Of a stretch of 64,000 bases of DNA, positions 6,338 through 64,000 are shown piece after piece. The notes below the pieces were generated by a model. The model did no database searches and was not told where the DNA came from. It saw nothing but the letters and a program-made list of their open reading frames with translations. Made by a program: the position numbers and the translations under genes. Numbering within the stretch: position 1 is the first letter of the stretch; each line of letters begins with the position of its first letter. The stretch is taken from positions 124,001-188,000 of IMG/VR virus record IMGVR_UViG_3300035698_022190, one strand, 5' to 3'.

Positions 6338-6355
6338 TTTTTCCTTTTGTCAAAG

Positions 6356-36735: not shown

Positions 36736-37068
36736 TTTTATGGTGCTTATGGGCAACATTAATTGCCAATATGACGCATAACAGTGCTTATAGCCAACAT
36801 GCTAATAACCAATATATGGCCGGTTACGTCATGATATAGGCCTTAACAACCAATAAATTACCTATTAACAATCCAAACTTTTCGACAAGGATGTAGGGTC
36901 CCCTATCGGCCCCCCATAGAGTACCTAGATGTGGCCGACAAAATTACCAGGGTACTTGGTATCGCAATCTGTGATCTCAAATTTTTTTAATTTAAATTTC
37001 ACAAAGGTCTCTATAGAAATTTTTAAGCTAAAGAAAAGGCTTCTTAAAATAAGCCCTTTCTATAAATG

Positions 37069-37575: not shown

Positions 37576-37697
37576 TTTTTGTCTCCTTTTATTTAGTTAG
37601 TAAATTAAGTTACTGTTCTTATACCTAATTTTTTTAAGATTTTGAAGTTGCCCTTTTGATTTTTTTACCTTATATTTAAACATAACCATAAAATTAT

Positions 37698-39050
37698 ATG
37701 CCTGAATCATTTGATCTTTTTAAAAAAGAAGTCACAGAATGGCTTCTAGACAACGTTCCACAAAATGCTCGAATCCTTGATGTAGGTCCTGGTAAAGGAA
37801 CCTATAGTCAGCTCCTTAAACCATATGGCTATCGCCTAGATTGTGTAGAAATATGGCAACCTTACATAGACAAGTATGAGCTATCCAGCCAATACGATCA
37901 TGTATATAATCAAGATATAATGGATTTTGAGGGCCTAGCTTTATATGATTTCATAATTCTAGGGGACGTCCTTGAACACATACCTACGATGCAGGCACAG
38001 CAACTTATAAATAGTATAATTCAGAAAGGTATAGGATGTCTTGTAGCGGTACCATATAGTATGGAACAGGGAGAATACGATGGCAATATTTATGAGACAC
38101 ACCATCAACCAGATTTAACAGAAGATGTTATGAACTATAGATATCCGAGCTTGACGCTTATATATGGTAATCAGTACTACGCATACTACACTAACAAATC
38201 TTGGAAATATGAAAAGGCATACGTACTCTTTACAACTGAGTCCTACTCTGATCTGGCTGATATATGTTGCCAATCAATTCGGGCTGTTAGCAAACACCCT
38301 ATACTTGTATATATGGCAAATTCTGATAAACAACTGGCGTCAGCTACCGAAACTATTCGGTGGGATTGTGATGCTAAAATTTTAGTTAATCGAGATGATT
38401 TTATACATCGTCGAGATAAAAATATATATTTACTTCTGAAAGAAAGACCTTCAATAATGTTAGATGCTTTAAAGCGAACTGAGGTTGCAGCATATGTTGA
38501 TACGGACTCTATTGCTAGTAAGCATGCGGATAGAATGTTTGCTTTTTATGATCCAACAGAGGCTTACCCCCATTTTACTAAAGGGATTTATGAGTTTCTG
38601 ATGGTTGATGGAAAAGGCGGGGTTGAGAATAGAGATGAACTTCACAAATCCTTAGAACATAATGCGTGTGATTTGTTTTCTATAGATCAAAGCACACGAA
38701 AAGATTATAGACAAACAGGTTATTTTGTGTGTGGACAAAATACTACAGGCTTTCTTAAGGAGTGGTATTGGATGTGCCTACACCCGACAATTTTGGGAAA
38801 TACTTTTAAGTATTGTCCTTTTCATGAAGAGACCATCGTAAATGTCTTATTATGGAAATATGACCTCACGTGCGGGCTCCCCTTAGTTTATGTAAACGGA
38901 CTCCATAAGGATCTTACTTTTAATGGACAAGAACAGCTTTTAGAGGACTGGGTAAAGATTCCAACGCATGAGGAAAATTTACTATTCTACCATGGCGAAA
39001 AAGATATAAAGAAATTAAAGAAATTTCTGCAATATTTGAGGACTTTTTAA
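37698..39050 (+). CDS. SAM-dependent methyltransferase fused to a glycosyltransferase-like domain
   Basis: ILDVGPGKG and DFIILGDVLEHI (class I MTase). The C-terminal part has a DxD (YVDTDS) and EETIVNVLLW. Confidence 0.8.
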   Translation: MPESFDLFKKEVTEWLLDNVPQNARILDVGPGKGTYSQLLKPYGYRLDCVEIWQPYIDKYELSSQYDHVYNQDIMDFEGLALYDFIILGDVLEHIPTMQAQQLINSIIQKGIGCLVAVPYSMEQGEYDGNIYETHHQPDLTEDVMNYRYPSLTLIYGNQYYAYYTNKSWKYEKAYVLFTTESYSDLADICCQSIRAVSKHPILVYMANSDKQLASATETIRWDCDAKILVNRDDFIHRRDKNIYLLLKERPSIMLDALKRTEVAAYVDTDSIASKHADRMFAFYDPTEAYPHFTKGIYEFLMVDGKGGVENRDELHKSLEHNACDLFSIDQSTRKDYRQTGYFVCGQNTTGFLKEWYWMCLHPTILGNTFKYCPFHEETIVNVLLWKYDLTCGLPLVYVNGLHKDLTFNGQEQLLEDWVKIPTHEENLLFYHGEKDIKKLKKFLQYLRTF

Positions 39051-39087
39051 TAGTTGCTATTCTGGGTTTTTTTAGTTATATTTAAAC

Positions 39088-39696
39088 ATGAGTTATATAC
39101 TACCAAAACACGAATCCATCTTTATTCATATTCCGAAAACAGGTGGAGGAGCAATCAAAAGATGGCTTGCATCGGAACTTCCGGGTATCCAAGTGCAAAA
39201 CCATGATACACCAGAATCACTGGTACGGTATCAAAAAGTAAGTAGAGATCTCGTTGCAGAATATTGGACGTGGGGAGTAATAAGAGACCCTTGGGCACGA
39301 TTTGTTTCAGCCTGGACCTCTCGAAGTAGCACCCCAAATTTGGAGAGATATAAAAGAGGAGACACTTTTGAAGAACATCTTCTTAGTTGTTATGAAACTC
39401 CTATGGACGAACTAATTCGGTTCGACATAATCCTAAAACCACAAATTGACTATATACGTTCTTTAGAGGATTCAAGCCTAGATATGGACTTTCTTATCAA
39501 TCATGAGAATTTTACAAAAGGTTTGAAAAAGGTAACCGATCACTTAGACATACCATTTCCAGTATTACCGAAATATAATGTTTCCGCCGATCCGGATAAA
39601 CACTTTAGTACATATTACACCCCTGAAACCAGAGACATGATTGCAGAGATGTATGCTGAAGATATAGAATACGGAAAGTATACTTTCGAAATTTAA
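39088..39696 (+). CDS. Sulfotransferase family 2 protein
   Basis: PAPS-binding motifs FIHIPKTGG and RDPWARFVS, and a C-terminal YAEDIEYGKY. Confidence 0.92.
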   Translation: MSYILPKHESIFIHIPKTGGGAIKRWLASELPGIQVQNHDTPESLVRYQKVSRDLVAEYWTWGVIRDPWARFVSAWTSRSSTPNLERYKRGDTFEEHLLSCYETPMDELIRFDIILKPQIDYIRSLEDSSLDMDFLINHENFTKGLKKVTDHLDIPFPVLPKYNVSADPDKHFSTYYTPETRDMIAEMYAEDIEYGKYTFEI

Positions 39697-39734
39697 AATA
39701 AAAAAAGGGAACTAATACTTCCCTTTTTTCTTCT

Positions 39735-40355
39735 ATGCCTTTTATAATGCCAAAACAAAAAGCAATCTTTCACCACATACCAAAGACAGGTGGAACTAGT
39801 ATTCGTGCATACCTAGAAAATTATACCCATGGCAAAGATGTATATCGTCACAGACCCCCGAGCAAATGTATAGAAGATGGGCGTATCCATCCAAAATGGT
39901 TTTTCGAATCTTTTAAATTTGCCTTTGTCAGAAACCCATTTGCGCGGGCCGTATCAGTCTGGGAATTTCGAGGACGAACGGATATTAAACGTCGGCACAA
40001 CTGCGCAACTTTTGAGGAATTTATAAAATACTATTACCCACATATGCCACTACAAGATTGGGATCCAGTAGAAGCAACTATGTGCCCACAACATCATTTT
40101 GTGATTAATAAAAAAGATTCTCGCCTAAGTATGGATTTTGTGGGATATTATGAAAATTTACAGAAACACTTTAATAAGGTCTGTACCCGCTTGAAACTTC
40201 CTGTAGGAACTTTAGAACACCGCAATAAAGCCTGGTCTTTAAAAAAGTATCCCCATTACAGTACCTATTACACTACAGAACTAAAACAAATGGTTACGGA
40301 AATGTACGAAGAAGATCTAGATACTTTTAAGTACACCTTTGAAAATTTAAGTTAA
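39735..40355 (+). CDS. Sulfotransferase family 2 protein (tandem paralog)
   Basis: FHHIPKTGGTS, RNPFARAVS and YEEDLDTFKY. Confidence 0.92.
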   Translation: MPFIMPKQKAIFHHIPKTGGTSIRAYLENYTHGKDVYRHRPPSKCIEDGRIHPKWFFESFKFAFVRNPFARAVSVWEFRGRTDIKRRHNCATFEEFIKYYYPHMPLQDWDPVEATMCPQHHFVINKKDSRLSMDFVGYYENLQKHFNKVCTRLKLPVGTLEHRNKAWSLKKYPHYSTYYTTELKQMVTEMYEEDLDTFKYTFENLS

Positions 40356-40801
40356 AAGAAGGGTTAACCCTTCTTTATATTTTACCTACCATTGTTCGTG
40401 AGCGTGCTCTTCTGCGTAACGCATTAGTTCTTCATCAGGCCATTTGTCCATTTGTGAAAAGCGTTGCTCTTTTAATCTTTTAAGCTCTTGCTCCTCTAAA
40501 ATAACTTCAAGCGCATCTCGGGTTGACATACTATGGCTAAGTATGTGTAGGTCTTCATAAACTTTGGGATAGCTATAATCAATATTAGCATTCAATATGT
40601 GGATAGCATGTGTATCGCTAAACAATTGAGGCCCATAATTTATGAGTAGCAAGGTAAGGAAAAGGCTGCCTATAAAAGCAACCCCAAAATGTTTTCCCTT
40701 TATCGATTTGTCCATAAGTTTTAATCTCCTTTAATTATATTTCTTATACCTTTTTCGGTATTAAAACTTGCTTTTAATACCTTTAAACGCTATATTTAAG
40801 T

Positions 40802-41464
40802 ATGATAAATAAAAAATTTCGAGAAAATTACTTTCAGAATATAAACACTCAGAACAAGGGCTATCATCTTGGCTGGATGTATGCAGATGGAAATGTAGCA
40901 GCAACGAGTAATCAAATAGGTTTTACTATAAACCCTAAAGATATAGAACAAGTTGAAAAATTTAAGGCTGATATGGCTATTTCAAATAATCCAACTTTTC
41001 ATCGTAAAGATGACAAATATGATATGGTAAGTTTTCATTTTAGTAGTAAAATTATGCGTGGAGATTTAATTAAATTGGGGTGTACTCCAAAGAAAAGTCT
41101 TACGCTTCAAGCACCCATAGATATGGATCCCCGACTTAGGCGGCACAATATTAGAGGTTATTTTGACGGAGATGGGTCAATAGGATATATGGGCAAGAAT
41201 AAACAGCCCCAGGTAACTTTTGTCGGTACGGAGAAAATGCTAAAATGGATTCAAAATGAATTACCGGTACCCTCACACATTTATGCTTTTACCCATGCTC
41301 ATGTAAATACACGCAGACTTGTTGTTACTAAACAGAAAGATGTTATAGATTTATATGACTATTTATATAAAGGAGAAACACGTTCTCTATCTCGAAAGAA
41401 AAGTAAGTTCGCAGAAATTAAGACCGACTTACAAGCTCGACACCGTAACAAGAAAAATTCTTAA
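40802..41464 (+). CDS. Free-standing double-motif LAGLIDADG homing endonuclease
   Basis: YHLGWMYADGNV and IRGYFDGDGSI motifs, flanked by its own promoter and terminator. Confidence 0.9.
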   Translation: MINKKFRENYFQNINTQNKGYHLGWMYADGNVAATSNQIGFTINPKDIEQVEKFKADMAISNNPTFHRKDDKYDMVSFHFSSKIMRGDLIKLGCTPKKSLTLQAPIDMDPRLRRHNIRGYFDGDGSIGYMGKNKQPQVTFVGTEKMLKWIQNELPVPSHIYAFTHAHVNTRRLVVTKQKDVIDLYDYLYKGETRSLSRKKSKFAEIKTDLQARHRNKKNS

Positions 41465-50700: not shown

Positions 50701-50809
50701 GCTCCTTTTAGGTTAATTTAAATGACTAGTTATAATTCTTATACCATTTATATTTTAAGAAAAAATAAAGAAAAGTTGCTTTTAAAGGTATTGTATGCTA
50801 TATTTAGGT

Positions 50810-51001
50810 ATGAAACCATCAGAAAAAATTTATAACGATTTGATTCGAGAGTGGAATGCCTTTGAATTAGATTACGAAAAATACTTAGAATTTGGTAACC
50901 AAGCAGCAGCACGACGTGCACGACTCTCTTTAATCAGGCTGAGAAAATTGGTGACCCCTTTTCGTTTAATAAGTGTAGCTGAATCACAAAAAAAGGGTTA
51001 G
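50810..51001 (+). CDS. Hc1-like small basic (histone H1-like) protein
   Basis: GNQAAARRARLSL...KLVTPFRLISV resembles the GNKAAGTRARK family. Apparently leaderless ATG at 50810. Confidence 0.65.
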   Translation: MKPSEKIYNDLIREWNAFELDYEKYLEFGNQAAARRARLSLIRLRKLVTPFRLISVAESQKKG

Positions 51002-51002
51002 A

Positions 51003-51809
51003 ATGAATTCATCAAAATATAAGCTTACATTAAGAAAATCTTTATTAGATTACAGAGATTGGCGTGCTGAAACAATATATAGTGCCGGACCGCTTCCTAC
51101 TAAGTTTAGTTTAGAAAAGACCTTATCAAGAATAAAAGACCAAGGTAGTTTTGGGACCTGCGCAGCACAGACAGCTGCCTGCATAAAAGAAAGTCAGGAA
51201 TATATAGAAGATGGCTTACTTGAGGACTTTAGTCCTATGTTTGTTTATGCACACAGAACTCCAACCAGCATAGCCGGGATGTACCCTAGAGATGTAATGA
51301 AGATTATGCAAAACTTGGGGGGCGTTGCTGAACAAGATTACCCCTACAAAGCGGCTAATAGAAATAAACAAAATATCACCACCGCTATTTACGAAGACGC
51401 CAAAAATTATACTATTAAAAGTTATGCAAGCATATCAACAATCGATGCAGTAAAAAGAGCTTTAATAGCAGATGGCCCTGTCTTTGTAGGGCTCCCAGTA
51501 TTTAATTTTGGAAATACTTTCTGGAAGGCTAATTTTGGTGACGATTCTCTTGGAGGGCATGCGGTTGCTATAGTTGGGTATGATAAAAAAGGATTTACTT
51601 TACGCAACAGTTGGGGAACTTCTTGGGGCGATTATGGTTACGGATTCTTTCCTTATAAAGATTGGGGTGTACAATGGGAAGCATGGACAACAATTGATGA
51701 CAGCTCCTTTATTATAGATAATTATAAATATAAAGCCAGCCAATCAGAGAATACAAAAAACTTTGTTTTGTTAATTCTTGAATGGATCCTAAACATTTTT
51801 AAAAAGTAA
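51003..51809 (+). CDS. C1 (papain-like) cysteine peptidase
   Basis: QGSFGTCAAQ, GHAVAIVGYD and RNSWGTSWG. Confidence 0.93.
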   Translation: MNSSKYKLTLRKSLLDYRDWRAETIYSAGPLPTKFSLEKTLSRIKDQGSFGTCAAQTAACIKESQEYIEDGLLEDFSPMFVYAHRTPTSIAGMYPRDVMKIMQNLGGVAEQDYPYKAANRNKQNITTAIYEDAKNYTIKSYASISTIDAVKRALIADGPVFVGLPVFNFGNTFWKANFGDDSLGGHAVAIVGYDKKGFTLRNSWGTSWGDYGYGFFPYKDWGVQWEAWTTIDDSSFIIDNYKYKASQSENTKNFVLLILEWILNIFKK

Positions 51810-52379
51810 TGAAATTAAAAAATATTAAATTAAGATATTTCTTTCTTCCTTCAATAGCTTTTATCGTAGCACTTTGGTTTGTTCCTACCCAAGCACATAT
51901 GGCCGTGGGACCTGAAATAGAAGTTATGGAGATGCGCTCCTTATCTCCAGATGGAGAAGAACCACAAGTGGTTCATTTTGAAACAGAAGAATTTTCCTGG
52001 CAAAAATGGATTACTTGGATAGTAGCTACTGGTAATGGTTTATTGGGAACTGCTGTGCAAATAAAAAGAATTAAAGATAAAAAATAACCAACTAATATAG
52101 ATGAAACGTACTAGAGAAGAAGTATATGCATTAATAGACCAAGAAAGGGCATATCAAACAAAATGGGATTTGACCAATTATCCCGGCAGGGTAAAAGATG
52201 CCGATAAAGAGGTTGAATCTTGGCTATCCTCTATGAGAGTATATCTCAGAAAATCAGAAGAAGCTGCGCTTTCAGTTGACAAAACAGAAGCATTAGAAAA
52301 TATTAGAAAAGTTTTAGGTCTTGGGGTTGCTTGCTTAGAACATCACGGCGGACCATCACGAGAACAACCTGTCATATAG
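51809..52379 (+). CDS. Membrane protein (51809-52087) and hypothetical protein (52101-52379)
   Basis: Two hydrophobic segments in the first ORF. The second is helical, beginning TREEVYALIDQERAYQ. Confidence 0.65.
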
Positions 52380-52484
52380 ACAGACCAAACTTTTGAGTAA
52401 TAAAAAACTGTGCCAAAATGACAATTCCTGGATTCTGGCACAGTTTTTGTACTATAATAAGCAACTAATTACATAAACAATAAT

Positions 52485-52841
52485 ATGGAGATACAAAAAA
52501 TGTACTACTTTTCAGAACTATTCGAAAACCGCGGTTTTGATTATGATTGGGAAAGCCGAACTAGTATGTCGGTAGAGACCCTTGATGATCATTTCGAAGC
52601 ATATATAGCATTACCAGGGATAAAGAAAAAAGATATCAAGGCAACAGTAGATAATAATCTTTTGACCATTGAAACAGAGCAAAATGAAAAATATAAAATT
52701 AATACAGCTTACAAAAAAACATGGCGCCTTGGCGATAGTATTGATACGAGTAAAATTGATTTAAAACTTGATGCGGGAATTCTTATAATCACATTACCAA
52801 AGAAGGAAGAATCCAAGTCTATTACATTAACTGTTAAATAG
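52485..52841 (+). CDS. Hsp20/alpha-crystallin small heat-shock protein
   Basis: ALPGIKKKDI and IDLKLDAGILIITLPK. Confidence 0.9.
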   Translation: MEIQKMYYFSELFENRGFDYDWESRTSMSVETLDDHFEAYIALPGIKKKDIKATVDNNLLTIETEQNEKYKINTAYKKTWRLGDSIDTSKIDLKLDAGILIITLPKKEESKSITLTVK

Positions 52842-52942
52842 CCGTCAGTTTTTTTTAATTTAAAAACAGGGAATGTTGGTTCCCTGTTTTTTTATGCCCG
52901 AAACCACTTGACTTTCTGCAAGTAAAAACGTTATATTTAGAT

Positions 52943-53152
52943 ATGACTAAAGCACAGAAAATATTTTTTAAGTATGCCCAAACAGCACCTTTAAAAACCA
53001 TAATTAAGGCAACTACAAAAGTTGTACAAAAAGGTGTAGGGACTGTTCCCCCAAAAGGAATTAAGAGTGTTGGTTTTAAAGGAAAACACTTGCCCAATAA
53101 AAATGCTTTTGAAGGGGCAGATAAAATTGGAAAAGGCGCTCCACGCCCCTAA
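52943..53152 (+). CDS. Small basic protein, first gene of the recoded block
   Basis: Apparently leaderless start 5 nt after TATATT, with the sequence FFKYAQ. Confidence 0.65.
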   Translation: MTKAQKIFFKYAQTAPLKTIIKATTKVVQKGVGTVPPKGIKSVGFKGKHLPNKNAFEGADKIGKGAPRP

Positions 53153-53154
53153 GT

Positions 53155-54510
53155 ATGTCGTCTAAAGCCAAAGGCATTCCCGATAGATCTAAGTATCTAC
53201 AAATGCCGGTTACTAAGAATAATGAGTGGCTTGGCAATATTCAGTCCCACAAGGCAAACAAGGCAGGGCAACATTTTGATTTACGTATAAATGATCCAAA
53301 AACTTCGCATGCATATTCTTGAGCACTTCGTAGTTTACCAGAACCTGGACAAAAGGTATTAGCCGTTGAACAGCCCACTCATACAAAATCTTATATGGGG
53401 TGGTCTGGTATAATAGAATCCGGCTACGGGGCAGGGACAGTAGAAAGTACTTTTCATGATAAAATAGAAGTGCTAGAATCTGGCACAGATAGAGTCACCT
53501 TTAATATGTATGGACCGGGACAAAAAGTACATCGTTATATGCTTATGCGGATGGATAACAAAGATTGGCTACTTTATAACTATACTGCTACAACAGACAC
53601 ACCATTAATACCAAAACATAAACGTTCTTATAAAGAAATATCATATGATAAAGTTGAAACTAATAGAGATAATGAGTGGATGGCGCCCAAGATGGACGGT
53701 GCCCACAATACAGTTCTTCTTAGACCTGAAAAACGCATTGACGTATATTCTCATAGGCTAAGTAAAAAAGGCTCAGAAAGAATTGATCATTCATATAGAA
53801 CAGATTTATATAAAACGAAAAGTCCTAAGGAATTAGGAGTAACGGTAGTTCGTTCTGAATTATATTTACCAAAACAAGATAGTTCTATAGTAGGAAGTTT
53901 GTTGACTCCTACTGTTTGGAAATCAAGACTAAAGCAAAGAACTCTTGGTAAATTACAAAATGTTATTTTTGATGTGGATCGTTATAAAGGACAAGACATG
54001 ACTGACGCGCCATACAGTGAAAAATGGCGAATATTGCAAAAAATTAATAAACTTATTCCTGCGCTACATTTACCCGAACTGGCTAAAACTCCAGAGCAAA
54101 AAAAAGCTATGTTAAGATCGGTTCGTGATAATACCCATTCAGAAACAGGCGAAGGTATTGTTATTTATAAACTTAACAAATCTATTCCTATCAAAGCAAA
54201 AGCTGTAAGTGACTACGATGTAAAAATAACCGGAACTTATCCAGCACTTCCTGGATCAAAATATGATGGAAAAGCTGTTGGAGGTTTCACGGCTACCCCA
54301 GAGTATGACAGCAATGTTGAGATTAGAGTGGGTACTGGCTTAAAAGATGTAGAACGAATGGAAGTTTATAAGCATCCTGAAAAATATATAGGCCAATGGG
54401 CTAAAGTCCAGGGACTAAAAAAAACGAAATCGGGCAAGATTAGAATGCCCGTATATAAAGGACTTCGTTTTGAAAAATATCTTGGCAAATTTTTTAACCA
54501 AAAAACATAA
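53155..54510 (+). CDS. LigD-type 3'-phosphoesterase domain fused to an ATP-dependent ligase (451 aa; TGA at 53320 read as Trp)
   Basis: Reads HKANKAGQHFDLRI...AYS[TGA]ALR...LAVEQPTH...GYGAGTV, matching the LigD PE pattern HxDLRL...SWA...LAV...GYGAG. The ligase part has APKMDG, EGIVIY and RMPVY. Confidence 0.88.
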
Positions 54511-54962
54511 TGGAAAACATAGCAAACTACTTTTATTCTGAAATGCTTGCAAATATGATATCACAAGCACGATATACTGTTAAAAGCTTAAAAAAACAGA
54601 ACTATTTATATTCCCCATCTTCGGCGGCGTGGGAGTATCAAACTATTCACTTTGGAGGGATGCGCGGATCTGGCCATAACACAGCTATGGAAGCCTTGTC
54701 CCATGTTTTTAAATGTGAAATTGTTTGCGCAATCGCCGCACATACCAAGCTTTTTCCTGAGGCAAAAAAAGGTACGTCAATTACTTGGCTTGACCATGTG
54801 CTACAGCCGGGAACTCATAGACATAAATTTGAAGTAGTGTTTCTAGATAACTGGGCCACCATGATGTTACAGGCATACCCAGATGTGGAAAGCATGATTC
54901 ACCAACTAGAGCCCATATATAGAGCATACACAAATAGCACTATTTTTGTATTAATACACTAG
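54510..54962 (+). CDS. Hypothetical protein
   Basis: TAATG overlap with the ligase gene. Ends in TAG. Confidence 0.6.
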   Translation: MENIANYFYSEMLANMISQARYTVKSLKKQNYLYSPSSAAWEYQTIHFGGMRGSGHNTAMEALSHVFKCEIVCAIAAHTKLFPEAKKGTSITWLDHVLQPGTHRHKFEVVFLDNWATMMLQAYPDVESMIHQLEPIYRAYTNSTIFVLIH

Positions 54963-54981
54963 AGGATGAAATAAAAAATAT

Positions 54982-57144
54982 ATGAGTTTTAATTTAAATA
55001 AAGTTGAGTATAAAGACCATTTAAAAGGGTTTTGAGCGGGCAATTTAATAGCTAATTGGAAAGCGTTGCCGAGCGAGTTCAAGAAATTTGAGCCACCATT
55101 TTTTACCACAAAGGATGATATACTGTTTCCCTATAACTGGCAAGTGAACTGGAAAGCTGACGACGACAATGATATTGAGTATATGTATTTACACTTAATG
55201 AATAAACATAAAACATTGCAGCTGTCAGCAAATCAAATTCGAGATGGATGATTAGAACATATAAACGATGATTATTTGTGGGTTGCCAATCAGCGTGCTT
55301 ATGATTTAATGAAAACAGGCATGGTTCCCCCAAGCACAGGAATGGCGTGTAATAATGAGTTTTCTGACAAGATTGATGCCCAAATAGAGTGTGAAATCTT
55401 TGGTGTATTTTATCCCGATGAGCCACACAAGGCATTAAATATAGCAGATTTGCCAATTAGAACAGTTGGCGAAGGTATTGCTTATCACGCCTCAAGAGTT
55501 TATGTGGCGATGTATTCTTTAGCTTTAAACAGTCAATCGCCATTAGAGTTGTTAGATAAAGCAATCCAATATGGGAATGATAAAACAAGTGAGATTTATA
55601 ATTCAATAAGAGTAAGTTTCAAAAATAGTTATACTTGGGAAGAAGCGAGAGATTTCTTTTATGAAGAATATCAAAAGAACAACTCTGACTACGATTGGGC
55701 GTTAGATGCTGAGATTAATTTTGGTGCTGTTCTAATTGCTCTGTTATGGGGTGAAATGGATTACAAAAAGACTGTGATGATTGGTACTCTTGCAGGATGG
55801 GATTCAGATTGTAATGCAGTTACAGCAGGGTCATTGGTTGGATATGTAAAAGGATTCAAACATCTTGAACAGGTTTTTGGTAGAAAGATTTATACTAATT
55901 ATAATATAGCAAGAACTCGTAAGAATATGCCTGATTATTTACCTAATGTAAGTGGCGCTGAAGATACTTTTGAGTTCATGGCAGATAGAATGATTAATTT
56001 TATGACAATAGATAATGGAGATAAAATGAAAAAAGTAATATTTTGTATTGGAGACAGTAGAACTGCTGCAGGACACAGTCCTTGGTACACACCAGCTCCC
56101 GATAGTTATCCTTTTTTCTTACAGCAAGAAATGGGGAATGGGTATGATGTTAGACAGTGGGGACAAGGTGGCACTTCTGTAACTAAGGGAGTCCATTGGA
56201 GTATCTGGGATGGTTTTGAAGGTAACCCGGCTTTGTCTTTTCAGCATTTAAAAAATGTTCAGCAAATAGAGAGTTTCTGGGATAAAGCTTTTCCTGGAAT
56301 GCCTTTTAATGAAACTGAGATAATTAACATCGTCAATTATGGTACTAATGATGCGATGAATAATAGATGGCCTACAACTAAAGCGAACTTTAAAAGGGAT
56401 TACAAAGCATTAACTTGGCTACTAAAAGGTAAAACATACCTTTGTTTACCACAGCCAACTTTTGGTACAGGTGAAGACCATGTTTATAACTCGTCAATTT
56501 TAGAAGTGCACGCATTAATAAATGAGCTTTCCAAAGAAACAGGATGCCCCACAATAGACTTTTATACAGGTACAACAGCTAGTATGTCGCCTGTTGATGG
56601 GCTACATTTCGGAGCATTAGGCAATATGCACTTTGCTAATGCAGCAAGTAAAGAATTAAAAAATGACTCACCAATAATACCACCAATAATCGGAGAACCT
56701 ATGGAAACACCAATAATTAAAATTGAAAATAATAAACTATCCGTAACTAATTTTGATCCAACTGTTACAAATTATAGCTGGCAGTATAGTAAAACATTGC
56801 ATGGTTATGATGAATGGCTTGGTTTTGGAACAGAAATGGACATTAAGCCGAGATTCCAAATAGATGGACATTATTTCTTTTGTTACGCAAGAGATAATAC
56901 CACTGATGGTAGAACACCTGATTCTAAGAGGGTGATATATAAATCAGGCGCCCCGGCCCCAATATGCGGATGCACAGATTCGGAAGCAACAAATTATAAT
57001 CCAAACGCCACAGAAGATGACGGCACATGCATATACTCTAACCCCACCAATAATGATAAAGTTGTTTTAGAGATGCGAGCACATCTTTTAACTGCTACAA
57101 ATGCATTAACTGCCATTGAAGACTTATTTGATGATATTGAGTAA
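54982..57144 (+). CDS. ADP-ribosylglycohydrolase-like domain + SGNH/GDSL hydrolase + C-terminal GCTD-NYNP repeat motif (720 aa; TGA at 55033 and 55249 read as Trp)
   Basis: LKGF[TGA]AGNLIANW, DDDNDIEY, IRDG[TGA]LEH, IDAQIECEIFG and GWDSDCN (ARH family). IGDSRTA, GQGG, NYGTND and DGLHF (SGNH). CGCTDSEATNYNPNATEDDGTC. Confidence 0.85.
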
Positions 57145-57157
57145 AATTTAAGGAGAC

Positions 57158-57433
57158 ATGATGAAAAAAATAGCTAATAGATTTGTGCCCTCAAGAGATT
57201 TCGTTAAGCTTTGAAACAGGCGTAGTCGTATTGCAGCACAGCTCACAAAACAGGTAGCTGAAATAGCAACTAAACGAGTAGCACCTGGACCAGAGCCATT
57301 GGGAAAATTTATGAAAGCAATAAAAGTTCCAAGCCAACGAATCACAAAAGTTGATCAAGATATTTCTAAAGTCCAGTCAATAATAAATAAAAAAAGATAT
57401 TCAAAATTATACAAACAGTATCATGGAGCTTAA
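57158..57433 (+). CDS. Basic hypothetical protein (91 aa; TGA at 57212 read through)
   Basis: AAGGAG RBS and an open frame to TAA except for one TGA. Its end overlaps the next gene. Confidence 0.7.
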
Positions 57434-57794
57434 ATTAAAATATATTTTCACTACCGAGACAGATCGTCAAGAGGGGCTTATGCAGAAGGCCCCTCTTGCA
57501 CAGAACGAAGGTGCTTTATTTATCTGGCAAAAGCCCGTTGTAAATTATGTTTGGAATAAGAACGTATCCTTTCCAATAGATGTCGGATTTTTTTCTGAAT
57601 CACACTCTCTTATTAATATAGAGCATTTAAGAGCTTATCAAGAAAGTCCAGTATATTCAGTTGGGCGCTATCAATTTATCTTAGAAACCCCTCATAGTTG
57701 GTTTATTAAACACAAAATAAAAGTGTTTACCAACTTAATTAAACTTTTAGACCCTATACCCAAAGAATTATCTTGACAAACTGCTAAAAATTAA
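57423..57794 (+). CDS. DUF192 family protein
   Basis: RQEGLM, GALFIW, WNKNVSFPIDVGF and ILETPHSWF. Ends at TGA 57776, or at TAA 57794 if read through. Confidence 0.85.
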
Positions 57795-57806
57795 CTATCT
57801 TAAAGT

Positions 57807-58304
57807 ATGTTAAATCCTGCGACTGATAAGACACAACCTTCCGAATATACGAAGGCCCTCAAACTAAAAAATAAACTTGATATTGCTATACGCAATAAAG
57901 AGCTCCAAAACATTTCTCATAATGTTCGAGCAATGGTTGATGGAAAAGAAAGTAACAAATCTTTTGCTAAGAGTGTTAGCAAACATACCGCCACAGGTGC
58001 TGTAGTAGGCGCTGCCGCTGGTGGGGTTGCCTCTGTTCCCCTATCTTTAATATCAAAAGGTTTTAGAGGTTTAAGACATAAGCCCATTGGCATGGCTACA
58101 GTGGCTGCCTCAACTGCAATCGGTGCAGTTGCGCTTGGCGGAAATCGCCTTAGACAGGGAAAACGTCCAATTCAAATTAGACAACACGACGCAGATTTAA
58201 TGCATTTAAAAGGCTTAAGACAAGAATTAAAAAACACAGAATCACCTGCTTATACAGCATATGTTAAACATAACAGAAAGTTGAGCAGGACTGTGGATGT
58301 TTAA
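57807..58304 (+). CDS. Basic protein with Gly/Ala-rich hydrophobic segments (putative internal virion protein)
   Basis: ATGAVVGAAAGGVASV and MATVAASTAIGAVALGG. Confidence 0.65.
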   Translation: MLNPATDKTQPSEYTKALKLKNKLDIAIRNKELQNISHNVRAMVDGKESNKSFAKSVSKHTATGAVVGAAAGGVASVPLSLISKGFRGLRHKPIGMATVAASTAIGAVALGGNRLRQGKRPIQIRQHDADLMHLKGLRQELKNTESPAYTAYVKHNRKLSRTVDV

Positions 58305-58764
58305 AGTCAATGCTGTTTCACATAAAAATTTTTCAGAAATACAAAAAGAAGTTTTAGATCAAACGATTGTTAAGCTCGAAACGGTATTTAATAGTCAAAA
58401 ATTTAAAGAACAAGTAGTAAACTTTAAATGTCCTTTAACAGGAAAGGAAGAATTTCTTGAAAATTTAGGACATTCAAATGAACAGTTGTATGACAAGTTG
58501 ATGAGCGGAGCCACACTCCACGTAGAAATTGATACCGACCTACCCAGTCGCAGGGTTATCGGATATACATATCCCAAAGGGGTTACAATTTATACATATA
58601 AGTGGTGGTTTGATAAATATGCAAAAAAATATTATGCTGCTCATTTAGCGCATGAATGGTGCCATAAACTAAACTTTGACCATACAGCACGTCGTAAGAA
58701 ACGGTGGAAGTATACTGTACCATATATGATAGGAAATATAGTAGAAGAGTTAACTAATGAGTAA
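58297..58764 (+). CDS. Zincin-like metallopeptidase domain protein
   Basis: HExxH motif in AAHLAHEWCHKLNFDH, preceded by VIGYTYP. Confidence 0.7.
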   Translation: MFKVNAVSHKNFSEIQKEVLDQTIVKLETVFNSQKFKEQVVNFKCPLTGKEEFLENLGHSNEQLYDKLMSGATLHVEIDTDLPSRRVIGYTYPKGVTIYTYKWWFDKYAKKYYAAHLAHEWCHKLNFDHTARRKKRWKYTVPYMIGNIVEELTNE

Positions 58765-61408
58765 AGCCAAAGATATTTGATCTAAGACTAAAAAACAAGT
58801 TGGACAGAAAGTCGAACAGATTGAGAAAAAAGATATAGCTATTGGTACTGGTGTAGGACTTGGCGCTGGGACAATAGCCCAGAAAATAGACAAACCTAAA
58901 CGTTTGTTTGCCGGTGGAGTCCATCAAGGTAAAAAATTAGTCTACTATAATCCTTTTGTAGCAAAGTATCCTTTTAAAATACAAGGTAAGTTCAAAGAGA
59001 CAAAGCGAAAAATTAATCGAGCAGCTACATTTATTTCCAGAAAAAAGGCTCAGATTAGACACCCCGCAATTCCCGTTTACACAGATTCCCAAAAAATACC
59101 AAAAGGCTCGGTCGCTTATAATTACTCTGAATTAGACCTTAAGGGCGGGGGCCCAAATAGGGCTCCTGTGCATAAAAGTGTATCTGTAATTAATAATATA
59201 AAAGATTCTTCTACCTTTACTGATAAGTATAATTTACAATCTAGTAAGGCTTTTTATTCACGGGGTATTTCAACAAAAACAGAAATGTTTGATGACTATG
59301 TATCACGCAAAGTAGGGAAACCCATAAAAGATATTAGCCAGCTAGAGGCTCAAAAAGTCTTTGAAAGTGCCTCTCACAAATTTGTAAAACCACGAGTCGG
59401 AACCATGAGCCAAGGAACTTATACTTCTGGTGAGAAACTTTTAACTGAATTTGATGAGACCATCGGAAAGGGTACTAACAAAAAATCAGGTAAACCAGCT
59501 TTCTTAAAGGTTTGAAATAATAAAAAGAATTTTATTGTACAAGACAAATTAGATTTTGCTGGCAAAAAAGAATATCGTATCCATGTGGGACCAGAAGGTG
59601 TAGAGCAGACCGGTTTTAAACGTTTTGGAAGAAGAAACCCTGTAAATGCCTTTAAACATGTGGATCAAGAATTTTTAGGAAATCTTGGGGCTGCTCATAA
59701 AGAATTTCTGAAAACTAAGGGTGAGTCAAAGAACATGGTTATTGGTTATGACGTCGCGCAGACCAAAAAAGGATGGAAGGTGGTCGAAGGTAATATTATG
59801 TCAGACTTTAAAGCAGGCGGACACTGAAGAGCAAAAAATTTAAAATTTAGACATGCTGTAACAGGAAAAGGTCTTACAGGTAAAGCTATAGGTGTAGGAG
59901 CTTTAGCAGCTGTAGGCGTAACAGCATACTCTGCATTAAAGAAAGAGGCTGCAAAGAAACGGAAAGTTTCCGGAGAAACAAAAGCCACGGCATTAATGGC
60001 AGGCGGAGCAACCACTGCTGGAACATATATTCATCTTCGTAAGCCTGATTATCACACATCAAGAAACATAGCCGCACTTCAAAGAGAATCAAAAGGTAAA
60101 GTTACTTCTTTACATTATAATACTTCAAGTAAATTCCATCAATTAGCTAATAAGGCTGTATTTGGTGGATCTATGAAACATCTTGATTCTCATAAGCTGT
60201 GGTCCCAAAGAAAAGGACCTTGAAAAAAAGGAAAGAAAAAACAAATTGAAGGTACATTATATCTTAGATCACAGAAGGGGACTGCAACAAAATGAGTACC
60301 AGATGTGGGAATTAATTTAGATCCGGGACAGCACGCAAAAAAGGGCGGCAAAGGATCAGCCTGAGGTCGTTTAATAAAAAAAGAAACATTATCTGATACC
60401 CCTGCATTGAAAGGTCTGGCAGTTGAGAATTGAGATGCTGATAGGTTTCTTGAATCGAGAGGTACTACTCGAAAAGAATTTTTGTCAAAAACAAACGATG
60501 AGTGGGAACCGCTATTTAAAAAGTGGCATAAAGAAAAGCCAGTATTTGTTAAACAAGACAGTTCCAATATGAAGGGAGTATATGGTGATTTAGATAAAAT
60601 TAGACGACACCAAATGAAAGACATTGGGGGAAAGAAAGTATATACCCCAATCAAAACTGACAATTATGATATTCTTAGAAAGCAATTAACTAACCCACCT
60701 AAGGCAGTAAAAGGGGCTGTTAATAGAGGCACTTTCTTTTTTGGCGCAAAGATTCCAAAGGAAATGAAAGAATATCGTGTTCACACTCTTAATGGAAAGT
60801 TTTTAAATGCTTCTCCTCGTTGGGGTGACAAAGCTCTAACAAAATGAGAAACCAATCCAGCTAAAATTAATGAAAAATCCATTCGACAGCTTGAAGCTGG
60901 TGTAACAAAGCTCCAATATGAAGAGCTCCCCAAAGAACTAAAAAAGCATAGACAGCATAAAAGATTTAAAACCTCGCCTGCTCGAATTCGTCACAAATAT
61001 TTAGGGATGGACGTTTTTATAGACCCATCTGGAAAGCATGCTCCAAAAATAGTAGAAATTAATTCTAGTCCTATGACTGCTGGTATGCCTATGACTAATT
61101 TAAGGAAGGATCAGGTAGAAGATATATTACAACAAAATAAAAGAATTAAAGGGCCTTTACCTGATACTAAAAGCAAAGCTTATAAAAAAATTGTGCGAAA
61201 GCCAAAAAACTTCTTACTTTTAACGAAATCTCGTTTAGGTAAAATGAAAGCACAGCATAGTGAAGCAAAAGCTTTTTATACTTCTTTGACTGGAAGAAAA
61301 GAATTTAGAAATGTAGCGGTAGCCAAAGCTGGCGTAGCTGGTTTAGCAACAATTGGATTAACAGGAGCGGCAATTCATGGCCTCAAAAAAAGAAAAAAGA
61401 ACAGATAA
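58757..61408 (+). CDS. 883-aa protein with two ATP-grasp modules and Gly/Ala hydrophobic segments (8 in-frame TGA read as Trp)
   Basis: Five listed ORFs share one frame, separated only by TGA (58778, 59513, 59825, 60221, 60293, 60362, 60431, 60845). Module 1: FVKPRVG, FIVQDKL, KEYRIHV, IGYDV, VVEGN. Module 2: VFVKQ, KEYRVH, LGMDV, IVEINSSP. Confidence 0.85.
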
Positions 61409-62567
61409 TTTAATTTCTGCAGCAGGCGGCACGGGTGTGGGGACAGCTGCATACTTAGGTAGCAGGTCTATTGACATCTCAAATCACTCAGATGCGACAC
61501 AGCAGCGTTTAATTTCTGCTCATAAAAAACGTGGTACAGGCATTGGTTTTAGAAATAAGCCTAGAGCCCTGCTAGCTAAAGTTATATATGAGCCTAAATT
61601 TAAGTATTATACTTTAAAGTCACAGGTACGGAAAAACCCACCAGGGGTAATGTTTAGTAAATTACTTACTAAAACTGAGGGCGGTATTACTATTAATGGC
61701 CCTAAGTTATTTAAATCTTATCGCAAAACTTTAAGTAATAAAAAGAATTACCAAAACCTTCCGCATATTGGAAAATATTTTCCGAAAACAATGGAAATGA
61801 CGGATGCCTTTGCAGAAGTTGGTATTTCAAATGTATCTAAAACCACCGATAAACAGCTTTTAAAAGGCGTAGCTGATATTGAAAAGAAACACGGTAAGTT
61901 CTTTTATAAACAAAAACCAGACTTTGATAGAAATCTAGGGCACTCAATGCGTGGAGCATACGGCCATAGTGAGGATATACCTAAGGGTGTAAAACGTACA
62001 GATATTACTCTTTGAGACCGCGTACGAAATAAAGATGTAAGATATAAAAAAGCTCCTGACATATTAAAAACAATTAGAAAAGAAGCCCCTAATGTACTAA
62101 TCAGCAATGATTGGGGAACAGGACACAAAGAATACCGTTTAGAAATTTTGGGAGATAAGCCCACACTTCTACACCGTTTTGGTCGTAAAAAAGGAATGAA
62201 GGTTAAGATAGACAAAGAATTAAGTGAGTCTGGAAGAGCCGGGTTAAACACATTTATTGGTGACTATAAAAAATATTTAACCAACAAAGGGGCATACAAG
62301 CATCTAGATGAAGTTCCTTTTGTTGGCGCAGATATAATTATTCCTAAGAAAGGAAGGGTAAAAGGAGTAGAGTTACAATGGAATTCAGGTTTCCCCTTCC
62401 ATGCTAAGGCAATGAAACATATGGTATCTAAACCCTATGGATCAACCGGACGCATGGCCGAATATATAACGGGACGTATTTCACATCCAAAGGCATTAGC
62501 TATAGGAGGTACTGCAGCCTTAGCAGTTGGCGGCGGAATCAAAGCGTGGAGAAGACGTAACGATTAA
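61377..62567 (+). CDS. 396-aa ATP-grasp protein with terminal hydrophobic segments (TGA at 62013 read as Trp)
   Basis: FPKTMEM, KFFYKQK, KEYRLEI, VGADII and GVELQWNSG. GGAG RBS. Confidence 0.8.
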
Positions 62568-63454
62568 TGAAAACTTTAGTTAAATTAGGTTTTGAGGCTG
62601 CTAAACCACGTACGCGTCTTAGACGTGTCACGGATGTAGGCACAGCGGCCTTTGCTGGGGCCTTAACGTCACTTGTACCCGGAGTCCCTATAGGAACCGG
62701 TATAGTAGCTGGGATAGCTCCTAAGGGCCATAAAACAGAAGTGGCGGCTAAAACAACAGCTGGAGGTATACTTGCCTCAGCACCCGCAGCAATGTATGGT
62801 GTGCATAGGTTAGCTAAAGATGTCAGTAATACTAATAAAGCTGATTATATGCGCTTAATAGATCGCGGACAAGAATTATATAAAGATGTAAAGACCGGGA
62901 AAGCAGGTAAGTGAAAAACGTTAAAGTATATGATGCGTCGAAGTAAAGGGGCAACTAAGAAAATGTATGCAGCCAACATTGCCTTAGGAACAATAGGAAC
63001 TGGGCTATCATATGCTGCAGCAACAAAAAATTATTATAAAAAAGCAGAACTAACTAAGCTTGGTTTCCATCCTGAGTCTTTTACGCAACCATCTCATGAA
63101 AAAGATCAGGCCTTTCTAAATTCTTTTTCGCGTGCGGGGATTAGTGGCAAAACAAGAAAAACTTTAAATAATCCACTGACTTGGGCTTTAGGTGGTATAA
63201 GTTTATTTATGAATCATAAAAAACGTTCAGATAATCCAGAGTCAATGTGGCCTTATTTAACTGGTGGTTTGTTAGCAGCAATATCAATAAAAAGATGAAG
63301 CAACGCAAGCAAAAGAGAAAAACAAAAATTTGTAAAAGAATATAATGCTACAATGGGCACCACTTTTACTTTAAAGCATCCTAAGATGCAATCACTTTGG
63401 AATATGACAAATGCCCATGCAAATAGGGTAGACAGGTTTAAAGGTAATGGCTAA
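62567..63454 (+). CDS. 295-aa basic protein with several Gly/Ala hydrophobic segments (TGA at 62912 and 63296 read through)
   Basis: ORFs 62567-62914 and 62930-63298 share a frame, which stays open to TAA 63452-63454 and overlaps the next ATG. Confidence 0.75.
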
Positions 63455-64000
63455 ATTTTTTAAAAAAGCTGAGTATGATCCAACTAAAGTACGTCAGGCC
63501 CCTGGCTATGATGCCGGAGCTCAATATAAACATAATAGAAACACGCCTACATCACATGCTATTAGACAATTAGGGGCAGAGTGAATTTATAGAAAACCCC
63601 CAAAAGGAGTTTTTAAAGAAAGTAAAATTCCTGTAAATCAGGGATCCCATTTAAAAACAGCCGGGGTATGGGGAAAATTTACTAATGCCTTGTCAGAAGG
63701 TTTTAAAGAAAGCGACGCTGAATTAAAACAAAGTATGAATCATGGTTGAGAGACTTTAAAAGCTCATGGTAGGTATGGTAAGCATTTGAGTAAACATAAA
63801 TTTTATGTTTATAAAACGGGTCGAGAGTATGGAACGCCTCGTATTCCTTTATTAAAGCACGACATGTCAAAATTTTTACCAAGTGAATGAGTTCCCTATA
63901 CTAATTTTTGAGAAGGCCCTGAGGGAGTTAAAGGTACATCAAAATCTAGAACATTAAAAACTAGATATGGTCTAGCAGCTCCAGCAGTTTACGATCGTTT
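63447..64000 (+). CDS. Partial basic protein running off the window (TGA at 63582, 63747, 63888, 63909)
   Basis: MAKFFKKAEYD... No TAA or TAG in 184 codons. Confidence 0.75.

What the first reader, a model, noticed from the sequence alone, without database searches (positions are those of the whole stretch)
53155..58780. TGA codons placed near 5' ends of otherwise TGG-coded genes, resembling a translational gate
In the LigD-like gene the single TGA is codon 56 (7 TGG elsewhere). In the ARH-SGNH gene the two TGAs are codons 18 and 90 (about 17 TGG elsewhere). The first TGA is codon 19 in 57158, codon 8 in 58757 and codon 46 in 63447. Without suppression these genes would yield only short peptides. 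TGA density rises towards the window end (8 TGA vs 5 TGG in 58757-61408), and plus-strand genes before 53.1 kb have none (10 of 10 TGG in 33418-35598, 8 of 8 in the C1 peptidase). Inference: either selection for early off-switch codons, or a recoding front spreading along a transcription unit that starts at the 52908 promoter.
Basis: partly seen in the sequence, partly recalled or inferred. Interest (0 to 1): 0.7.

Follow-up and report, generated by a model that had tools for sequence, protein, structure and literature searches.

The report
Phage late genes read TGA as tryptophan
The early TGA codons are real tryptophan codons in the late genes of a 210-kb salt-lake phage that switches genetic code (a known strategy), but their position near gene starts looks like chance; the phage's TGA-reading tRNA has an unusual second, tryptophan-type anticodon arm.

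Summary
The window is part of a complete 210,208-bp phage from salt-lake and marine metagenomes.

**What the TGAs are.** In plus-strand structural and late blocks, TGA encodes Trp: 22 of 34 aligned TGA sites are W in a standard-code relative, the same rate as TGG sites. Minus-strand replication genes have no sense TGA and use TGA as a stop. This is the known phage stop-codon recoding.

**The 5' gate idea fails its own tests.**
- Genome-wide, TGA sits where a random draw of Trp sites would put it (mean relative position 0.508, null 0.519, p=0.24).
- A syntenic recoded relative shows no 5' bias (p=0.88).
- The 5' TGAs are not conserved. LigD W56 is TGG in two relatives, and one of them carries its single TGA at a different Trp. 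ARH W18 and W90 are TGG in the relative.
- The rise in TGA density stops beyond the window (rho=-0.06).

**What holds.** A conserved terminator plus promoter (52866-52937) marks the start of the TGA-bearing unit.

**Side finding.** The phage's only tRNA(UCA) is a tRNA-Trp with two anticodon arms (UCA and CCA). About 50 distinct versions occur in uncultured phages, and I found no description of it.

The parts
50795..52841 (+). Plus-strand genes upstream of the boundary (68-aa ORF, C1 peptidase 51003-51809, two 92-aa ORFs, 118-aa ORF). Together they hold 0 TGA and 17 TGG, and all end in TAA or TAG.
   Evidence: The homologues in relative L017 are annotated Hc1, Peptidase_C1 and HSP20, and are also free of sense TGA.
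52866..52894 (+). Intrinsic-terminator-like hairpin (11-bp stem, -14.6 kcal/mol) followed by a run of seven T.
   Evidence: fold; conserved in L017 and L020, with compensatory stem changes.
52908..52937 (+). Sigma-70-type promoter TTGACT-18-TATATT. The next ATG is only 6 nt after the -10 box, which suggests a leaderless transcript.
   Evidence: the -35 and -10 blocks are invariant in three phages; the same arrangement recurs at five other genes on both strands.
52943..53152 (+). 69-aa ORF, the first gene of the unit. It has no Trp codons.
   Evidence: 38% identity to the L017 homologue.
53155..54510 (+). LigD-like gene (3'-phosphoesterase plus ATP-dependent ligase plus OB domain), 451 aa. It is the first gene with a sense TGA (codon 56, 53320-53322), and the codon falls in the conserved S-W-A motif.
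   Evidence: The 8 Trp sites are the same in L017 (76% identity). The own TGA is at W56; the L017 TGA is at the site matching own W255. L020 has none.
54510..54962 (+). 150-aa ORF with 0 TGA and 3 TGG.
54982..57144 (+). ADP-ribosylglycohydrolase plus SGNH/GDSL hydrolase gene, 720 aa. TGA at codon 18 (55033-55035) and codon 90 (55249-55251).
   Evidence: Bacterial homologues have W at both sites. The L017 orthologue has the domain order SGNH-ARH, TGG at both sites and no TGA.
57158..57433 (+). 91-aa basic ORF with an AAGGAG ribosome-binding site and TGA at codon 19 (57212-57214). Whether it is a real gene is unverified.
   Evidence: The codons after the TGA score as coding (LOD 24). The ORF is absent from L017.
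57423..57794 (+). DUF192 gene. A TGA at codon 118 (57774-57776) is followed by 5 codons and then TAA. L017 has a TGA at the same place.
58297..58764 (+). 155-aa gene. The true start is at 58297, so the TGA at codon 8 of the longer code-4 ORF (58261) lies outside the gene.
   Evidence: The L017 homologue is 155 aa, and the start overlaps the previous gene by 8 nt.
58757..61408 (+). 883-aa gene of unknown function with 8 TGA and 5 TGG. TGA codon 8 (58778-58780) lies in a 13-codon N-terminal insertion.
   Evidence: The start ATG is homologous to that of L017 (same 8-nt overlap). Two of the TGAs are shared with L017.
61377..64000 (+). Three further recoded genes: 396 aa, 295 aa and the start of a 269-aa gene. 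They hold 1, 2 and 5 TGA (the fifth lies beyond the window end), and most are shared with L017.

Best explanation
The window belongs to a complete 210-kb phage from salt-lake and marine samples that uses two genetic codes.

- Replication and nucleotide-metabolism genes on the minus strand, and a few plus-strand units, are written in the standard code and sometimes end in TGA.
- Four plus-strand blocks read TGA as tryptophan. They hold the baseplate, portal, terminase, protease-like, tail-fibre and fused beta-beta' RNA polymerase genes, plus the unit that starts at the conserved terminator/promoter at 52866-52937.

Without that tRNA these genes give truncated products, so code use works as a switch for whole expression units. 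This is the model already proposed for recoded gut phages.

Within a recoded unit, TGA and TGG behave as synonymous Trp codons drifting under A+T pressure. Each lineage has converted different Trp sites. The LigD-like and ARH-SGNH genes have few conversions, and in this lineage those few happen to lie early in the gene.

Shown here: TGA means Trp, the block structure of code use, the tRNA, non-conservation of the 5' TGAs, and the lack of positional bias. Inferred: the timing of expression, the host's standard code, and the gating function.
For: TGA means Trp:
- 22 of 34 own TGA sites align to W (TGG) in the standard-code relative G001. Own TGG sites do so at 125 of 180.
- 5 of 8 terminase TGAs align to W, including all five that lie in well-conserved stretches.
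- The LigD and ARH TGAs fall at Trp sites conserved in homologues.

Block structure:
- Minus strand: 0 credible sense TGA against 433 TGG, and 26 of 176 genes end in TGA.
- Plus strand: 114 TGA against 270 TGG.
- Functions by PHROGs and Pfam. NAPRTase ends at a TGA, and its Pfam match reaches aa 404 of 408.

The tRNA(UCA) lies at genome 65786-65883. It is present at the same site in the relative L022, which carries in-frame TGAs, and in L024. It is absent there in G001, which reads well in the standard code, and in L023.

No positional selection.

Non-conservation:
-.
- At conserved Trp sites in the recoded zone, own/L017 codons are TGG/TGG 28, TGG/TGA 13, TGA/TGG 4 and TGA/TGA 9.

TGA is tolerated rather than favoured: its share of Trp codons is 0.34, while other NNA/NNG codon pairs in the same genes are 0.73-0.84 A-ending.

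Unit boundary. The general model is in bioRxiv 10.1101/2021.08.26.457843.
Against: - A mild genome-wide excess of TGA within the first 60 codons remains (17 observed, 12.3 +- 1.8 expected, p=0.012). At least two of the 17 rest on unverified starts.
- The 4-gene local cluster is nominally significant (p=0.008 for mean relative position).
- Only one recoded relative (L017) covers the whole region, and one more (L020) covers LigD alone.
- There are no transcript, ribosome or proteome data, so expression timing and actual read-through are inferred.
- The host is unknown.
- The same sigma-70-type promoter form occurs before both TGA-free and TGA-bearing genes, so the promoter type does not explain the timing.
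Confidence: 0.8

Rival explanations
1. Selected 5' gate. TGA is kept near the start of late genes so that ribosomes abort early until the suppressor tRNA appears.
For: The local cluster: LigD codon 56, ARH codons 18 and 90, ORF 57158 codon 19 and gene 58757 codon 8, with p=0.008-0.08. Genome-wide, TGA within the first 60 codons is 17 against 12.3 expected, p=0.012.
Against: - Mean relative position genome-wide equals the null (p=0.24), and p=0.50 outside the region.
- Relative L017 shows no bias (0.60 against 0.57, p=0.88).
- The 5' TGAs of LigD and ARH are TGG in L017, and the L020 LigD gene has no TGA.
- The ARH orthologue in L017 and the LigD orthologue in L020 have no TGA at all.
- The major capsid, sheath and portal genes have none.
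- TGA is under-used relative to other A-ending codons.
Confidence: 0.1
2. Recoding front. TGG-to-TGA conversion spreads progressively along the transcription unit from the 52908 promoter.
For: TGA share rises within the window (rho=0.58, p=0.077, n=10). The first TGA-bearing gene is LigD in both the own phage and L017.
Against: From LigD onward, across the contig end and as far as genome position 7759, rho=-0.06, p=0.74. TGA-rich genes (terminase, 8 of 17) and TGA-free genes (major capsid, sheath) are interleaved. Other recoded blocks carry TGA in their first Trp-containing genes.
Confidence: 0.07
3. The TGAs are stops. On this view the genes are broken (pseudogenes or assembly errors), or the true starts lie downstream of the TGA.
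For: True for one case: the TGA upstream of the 58297 start. It is also true for all 14 apparent minus-strand 'internal' TGAs, whose leading segments have no coding signal.
Against: Pfam domains and homologue alignments run across the TGAs. There are 114 in-frame TGAs with coding signal on both sides. Four runs give identical sequence. A tRNA(UCA) is present.
Confidence: 0.02
4. TGA encodes another residue (Gly as in code 25, Sec, or Ser via the long-armed tRNA), or the host itself uses code 4.
For: ARAGORN labels the tRNA as tRNA-SeC, and it has a long extra arm of the kind SerRS recognises.
Against: - W is the aligned residue at 65% of TGA sites, the same as at TGG sites. S, C and G are at background level.
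- Rfam tRNA-Sec scores 32.5 bits, below the 47-bit cut-off.
- The acceptor end is Trp-type: A1-U72 and G73.
- 26 early genes stop at TGA, which a code-4 host would not allow.
Confidence: 0.03

Closest known systems
TGA-to-Trp (code 4) recoded phages of gut microbiomes, for example the Agate and Jade clades (Borges et al., bioRxiv 10.1101/2021.08.26.457843)
   Same: In-frame TGA aligns to Trp. TGAs are concentrated in structural and late genes and absent from replication genes. The phage encodes a tRNA(UCA). The genome is low in G+C. Close relatives use the standard code. The suppressor tRNA sits next to a lysis-type gene (Amidase_2).
   Different: The source is salt-lake and marine, not gut. 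The genome is 210 kb with a fused beta-beta' RNA polymerase. No RF1 or TrpRS is encoded. TGA is still a fairly common stop in early genes (26 of 176). The suppressor tRNA has a second anticodon arm that carries CCA.
Block-wise dual coding in crAss-like phages (Yutin et al. 2021, PMC7886860; the Mgcod tool, bioRxiv 10.1101/2022.06.29.495998)
   Same: The genome is divided into blocks that use one code or the other, and here a block boundary coincides with a terminator/promoter pair.
   Different: A different phage lineage. crAss-like phages reassign opal or amber stops; here the reassignment is TGA to Trp.
Bacterial tRNA-Trp and the tRNA-Trp(UCA) of Mycoplasmatales
   Same: A1-U72 and G73 acceptor identity, and a UCA anticodon that reads UGA as Trp. 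The two halves of the phage tRNA match annotated tRNA-Trp genes.
   Different: An extra 5-bp stem with a 7-nt loop N-U-C-C-A-A-A lies between the UCA arm and the T arm. No record in the cultured-phage collection matches more than about half of the tRNA.
tRNA-Sec and other class II (long variable arm) tRNAs
   Same: Length of about 95 nt, a long arm in the variable region, a UCA anticodon and G73. ARAGORN calls it tRNA-SeC.
   Different: The Rfam tRNA-Sec score is below the cut-off. The acceptor stem has 7 bp, not 8 or 9. The TGA sites align to Trp. The extra-arm loop is sequence-conserved as a Trp anticodon loop.

Membership tests
Stop-codon-recoded phage (TGA read as Trp in late genes) | In-frame TGA in conserved genes, aligned to Trp in homologues | tested here: met
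   22 of 34 TGA sites are W in G001, against 125 of 180 TGG sites.
Stop-codon-recoded phage (TGA read as Trp in late genes) | Recoded codons concentrated in structural and late genes, with replication genes in the standard code | tested here: met
Stop-codon-recoded phage (TGA read as Trp in late genes) | Phage-encoded suppressor tRNA for the recoded stop | tested here: met
   One tRNA(UCA) at genome 65786-65883. It shows compensatory changes against the copies in L022 and L024.
Stop-codon-recoded phage (TGA read as Trp in late genes) | The host uses the standard code | not testable with these tools
   The host is unknown. Indirect evidence only: 26 early genes end in TGA.
Stop-codon-recoded phage (TGA read as Trp in late genes) | Read-through occurs in vivo and is timed to late infection | not testable with these tools
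   The listed runs are all DNA and no listed RNA run was shown to hold it; the search was not RNA-specific.
   A weak excess within the first 60 codons (p=0.012) is the only residue.
   One of the five testable 5' TGAs is shared with L017.
tRNA-Sec (selC) | Reaches the Rfam RF01852 gathering score, and UGA sites correspond to Sec or Cys | tested here: not met
   32.5 bits against a 47-bit cut-off. TGA sites align to W.
Bacterial-type tRNA-Trp | G73 discriminator and an A1-U72 first pair (identity set as reviewed in PMC9976931) | tested here: met
   Own tRNA. Family: G73 in 49 of 49; A-U in 40 and G-U in 8 of 49.
Bacterial-type tRNA-Trp | CCA anticodon in the anticodon arm | tested here: inconclusive
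   The arm next to the D arm carries UCA. CCA sits in the second arm. Which arm occupies the decoding position cannot be told from sequence.

The most novel reading that the evidence does not exclude
The TGA codons are decoded by a previously undescribed kind of suppressor: a tRNA-Trp in which the anticodon arm is duplicated.

- The 5' copy carries UCA and reads UGA.
- The 3' copy keeps the native Trp loop (N-U-CCA-A-A) and may serve as the handle by which a standard-code host's TrpRS, which relies on C34-C35-A36, still charges the tRNA with Trp.
- Alternatively, either arm may be presented to the ribosome, so that one tRNA reads both UGG and UGA.

This would explain how such phages switch code without encoding their own TrpRS.
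Probability: 0.35. Interest if true: 0.85.

Novelty: new variant of a known kind. Interest (0 to 1): 0.55.

Why it matters
For the finding as stated, this is a useful negative. In a code-switching phage, the position of recoded stops inside genes carries no detectable signal. Recoding acts on whole expression units, and individual TGA/TGG choices drift.

The work also extends TGA-to-Trp recoding from gut phages to a large clade of ~200-kb salt-lake and marine phages.

The more consequential point is the suppressor tRNA. It has long been unclear how phages in standard-code hosts get a UCA tRNA charged with Trp. Only about a third of code-4 phages have a detectable suppressor, and very few encode TrpRS. 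A conserved second arm displaying the Trp anticodon makes that question directly testable with simple aminoacylation and suppression assays. It could also give genetic-code engineers a natural design for keeping synthetase recognition while changing the decoding anticodon.

Tried and rejected
- Megablast of the region against cultured phages: no match.
- IMG/VR scans with the ARH-SGNH and LigD proteins, and with an exact 21-mer of the tRNA: nothing. The relatives came instead from the protein-cluster and contig look-ups and from one metagenome scan.
- The record behind L017 is not held for whole-record searches, so its tRNA set could not be read.
- One portal relative had no retrievable DNA.
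- Release-factor and TrpRS families: absent from the genome.
- The base following the codon: sense TGA against TGG differ only weakly (chi-square p=0.04). Sense TGA against stop TGA do not differ (p=0.20). No usable context signal.
- Pseudogenes, sequencing error, and Sec, Gly or Ser decoding: rejected for the reasons given under the rival explanations.
- ARAGORN's tRNA-SeC label: rejected.
- No complex prediction was run for tRNA with TrpRS, because the tool gives no verdict for RNA.
- PHROGs gave no hit for most large recoded proteins, including the 883-aa gene in the window.


Full report
**What the window is.** The window is bases 124001-188000 of a single 210,208-bp contig with 36.7% G+C. 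The contig is an IMG/VR virus record that CheckV rates as 100% complete. Near-identical sequence is held by many salt-lake and some marine metagenome runs. Contigs from four of those runs cover window 52800-58780 with no differences. The genome carries 25 ordinary tRNA genes and a tmRNA-like gene in one cluster, plus a single separate tRNA with anticodon UCA at genome 65786-65883.

**Checking the observation.**
- The LigD-like gene (53155-54510) has one TGA at codon 56 and 7 TGG.
- The ARH-SGNH gene (54982-57144) has TGA at codons 18 and 90 and 17 TGG.
- The ORFs at 57158, 58757 and 63447 have their first TGA at codons 19, 8 and 46.
- Gene 58757-61408 has 8 TGA and 5 TGG.
- Plus-strand genes before 53.1 kb have none.

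Pfam domains span the TGAs: LigD_N covers aa 30-97 and ADP_ribosyl_GH covers aa 16-296. The sequence upstream of each of these TGAs is therefore coding.

**What TGA means.** A syntenic relative, G001 (IMG/VR 131.6-kb fragment; terminase 49% identical), reads well in the standard code. Of 34 own TGA sites that align to it, 22 are W there. Own TGG sites are W at 125 of 180, so the rates are the same. In the terminase, the five TGAs that lie in well-conserved stretches all align to W. LigD codon 56 is the W of the conserved S-W-A motif. ARH codons 18 and 90 are W in bacterial homologues. TGA is therefore Trp, not Gly, Sec or Ser.

**Code use is block-wise.** I called genes with my own codon-score method.
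- On the minus strand there is no credible sense TGA against 433 TGG. The 14 apparent cases are all false 5' extensions without coding signal. Twenty-six of 176 minus-strand genes end in TGA.
- On the plus strand there are 114 sense TGA against 270 TGG.
- Minus-strand genes include family A DNA polymerase, class II ribonucleotide reductase, an AEP primase, helicases and NAPRTase. NAPRTase ends at a TGA.
- TGA-bearing plus-strand blocks include a baseplate wedge protein, large terminase (8 TGA), a protease-like protein, tail fibres and a 2,019-aa fused beta-beta' RNA polymerase. The portal (0 TGA, 5 TGG), the major capsid protein and the tail sheath lie in the same blocks but have no TGA.
- One plus-strand block (window 30730-41464) and the genes at 50795-53152 are TGA-free.

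This is the pattern described for recoded gut phages, where the recoded stop is proposed to hold back late genes until a suppressor is made.

**Position test.** I permuted TGA among the Trp sites of each gene.
- Genome-wide, the mean relative position of TGA is 0.508 against a null of 0.519 (p=0.24).
- Outside the finding region the result is 0.525 against 0.525 (p=0.50).
- The four genes of the finding give p=0.008-0.13 depending on the statistic. They were picked after looking, and other runs of four TGA-bearing genes have lower means.
- A small excess of TGA within the first 60 codons remains (17 against 12.3, p=0.012). It includes starts I could not verify: for gene 205074, the alignment to the relative begins only at aa 34.
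- In the syntenic region of the relative L017 there is no bias (0.60 against 0.57, p=0.88).

**Conservation.** L017 is a 113.8-kb ENA contig, and the same sequence occurs in a JGI and a Logan assembly. It carries the same gene order: C1 peptidase, HSP20, small ORF, LigD-like, a 150-aa ORF, ARH/SGNH, DUF192, a 155-aa gene, an ~830-aa gene and so on. It is itself recoded.
- LigD is 76% identical and has the same eight Trp sites. My phage has TGA at W56, where L017 has TGG. L017 has TGA at the site matching my W255, where mine is TGG.
- A third phage (L020, 78% identical) has no TGA in LigD.
- The L017 ARH/SGNH orthologue has the two enzymatic domains in the opposite order, has TGG at both sites and has no TGA at all.
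- The TGA at codon 8 of a code-4 ORF at 58261 is an artefact, because the homologue fixes the start at 58297.
- The start of gene 58757 is homologous in both phages, but my TGA at codon 8 lies in a 13-codon insertion that L017 lacks.
- ORF 57158 has no counterpart in L017.
- Only the TGA at codon 46 of gene 63447 is shared.

Across the recoded zone, conserved Trp sites are TGG/TGG 28, TGG/TGA 13, TGA/TGG 4 and TGA/TGA 9. Codon choice at Trp sites has therefore diverged substantially at this distance, as expected of synonymous sites.

**Gradient and unit boundary.** TGA share rises across the ten informative genes inside the window (rho=0.58, p=0.077). From LigD onward, across the contig end and as far as genome position 7759, there is no trend (rho=-0.06, p=0.74).

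The boundary itself is real. A hairpin plus T-run at 52866-52894 and a TTGACT-18-TATATT promoter at 52908-52937 are conserved in all three phages. The hairpin stem shows compensatory changes. The first TGA-bearing gene downstream is LigD in both my phage and L017. The start codon lies only 6 nt after the -10 box. The same arrangement recurs at five other genes on both strands, so this promoter type alone does not separate the two codes.

**Is TGA favoured?** In the recoded blocks TGA makes up 34% of Trp codons. Other NNA/NNG codon pairs in the same genes are 73-84% A-ending. TGA is tolerated, not preferred, which argues against positive selection for TGA as a gate codon. The base following the codon gives no clear signal.

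**The suppressor tRNA (outside the window).** The tRNA(UCA) is 98 nt long. It has A1-U72, G2-C71, G3-C70, G73 and an encoded CCA end, like the phage's own tRNA-Trp(CCA). These are the bacterial Trp identity elements (PMC9976931). Rfam's tRNA-Sec model scores it below the cut-off.

Between the UCA arm and the T arm it has an extra 5-6-bp stem with a 7-nt loop GUCCAAA. That loop has the form of a Trp anticodon loop.
- The tRNA sits just upstream of an Amidase_2 gene, about 4 kb from the portal gene.
- The same tRNA is at the same site in L022 (portal 79% identical) and L024 (60%).
- It is absent at that site from G001 and L023.
- All stems show compensatory changes among the three copies, while the extra loop is invariant.

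A pattern scan of IMG/VR without any constraint on the extra loop returned 48 distinct long-armed tRNA(UCA). Of these, 26 have GUCCAAA and most of the rest have CUCCAAA or UUCCAAA. Nine have no CCA.

Forty-nine distinct members align well.
- G73 occurs in 49 of 49.
- The first pair is A-U in 40 and G-U in 8.
- RNAalifold predicts the extra arm, with 5 to 27 double compensatory changes per pair.

Loci that carry this tRNA gain more long-ORF coverage when TGA is read through than when TAG is read through (p=1e-5), and more than the other loci returned by the same scan (p=1.4e-5).

BLAST of one member against cultured phages splits it into two halves. The 5' part, up to the UCA loop, matches the 5' part of annotated tRNA-Trp genes. 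The part from the extra arm to the 3' end matches tRNA-Trp from its anticodon arm onward. No record covers more than about half of the tRNA. The simplest reading is a tRNA-Trp with a duplicated anticodon arm in which one copy has mutated to UCA.

Six literature searches and four papers read found no description of such a tRNA. That library is incomplete, so novelty is probable, not certain.

**Comparison and verdict.** The phenomenon behind the finding is a known kind: a phage with standard-code early genes and TGA-to-Trp late genes served by its own suppressor tRNA. This phage is a new, non-gut member of that kind.

The boundary at the 52908 promoter is supported. The most interesting element is the two-armed tRNA-Trp(UCA/CCA), whose function is inferred and not shown. 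I give 0.35 to the reading that the CCA arm keeps TrpRS recognition or allows dual decoding.

Noticed in passing
outside the window: genome 65786-65883 (+) = L001:5786-5883; relatives L022:201-296 and L024:1610-1704; family L025-L144: The only tRNA(UCA) of the phage is a tRNA-Trp-like molecule with two anticodon-type arms. One arm carries UCA. The other carries the Trp loop N-U-CCA-A-A. About 50 distinct versions occur in IMG/VR contigs. All have G73 and nearly all have A1-U72. The second stem covaries heavily, and the tRNA is associated with TGA read-through gain in the surrounding DNA.
   Followed up: partly
window 52908-52945; also genome 3433, 29350(-), 80390(-), 181801, 196149: A recurrent TTGAC-N17/18-TATATT promoter with the ATG exactly 6 nt after the -10 box, on both strands. 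This suggests leaderless mRNAs for a subset of genes.
   Followed up: partly
window 54982-57144 against L017:10001-12181: The ARH and SGNH hydrolase domains are in opposite order in two otherwise syntenic orthologues (ARH-SGNH here, SGNH-ARH in the relative), with a shared C-terminal domain.
   Followed up: partly
window 57774-57776 and L017:12194-12562: The DUF192 gene has a TGA 5 codons (3 in the relative) before the TAA or TAG, at the same place in both phages. It may give a short product under the standard code and a slightly longer one once TGA is read.
   Followed up: no
genome 83406-89465 (L006:406-6465): A single 2,019-aa polypeptide fuses beta-like (Rpb2) and beta'-like (Rpb1) RNA polymerase domains. 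It carries 3 sense TGAs and is conserved in relatives (57-68% identity).
   Followed up: partly
genome 193423-196092 (L007:6423-9092); portal homologues P0127, P0160, P0162-P0164: The large terminase has an insertion of a few hundred residues between its N- and C-terminal parts, in this phage and in the relative G001. Three of its TGAs lie there. Several portal homologues of ~1,000 aa carry LAGLIDADG (intein-type) insertions, and L022 has a GIY-YIG gene inserted next to the amidase gene.
   Followed up: no
genome 202388-203284 (major capsid), 5496-7118 (sheath), 70036-71910 (portal): The genes expected to be most highly expressed in the recoded blocks have no TGA (2, 4 and 5 TGG), while enzymes and very large proteins have many. 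This fits a residual cost of TGA decoding.
   Followed up: partly
genome 95541-107601 (L002): A cluster of 25 tRNA genes, including tRNA-Trp(CCA), and an ARAGORN-predicted tmRNA-like gene, all on the minus strand.
   Followed up: no
tRNA family alignment A6, columns 33/49: The top pair of the UCA anticodon stem (27-43) is often G-U or mismatched (U-U in this phage). The stem is then effectively 4 bp, a feature recently linked to UGA decoding by tRNA-Trp (PMC13092985).
   Followed up: no
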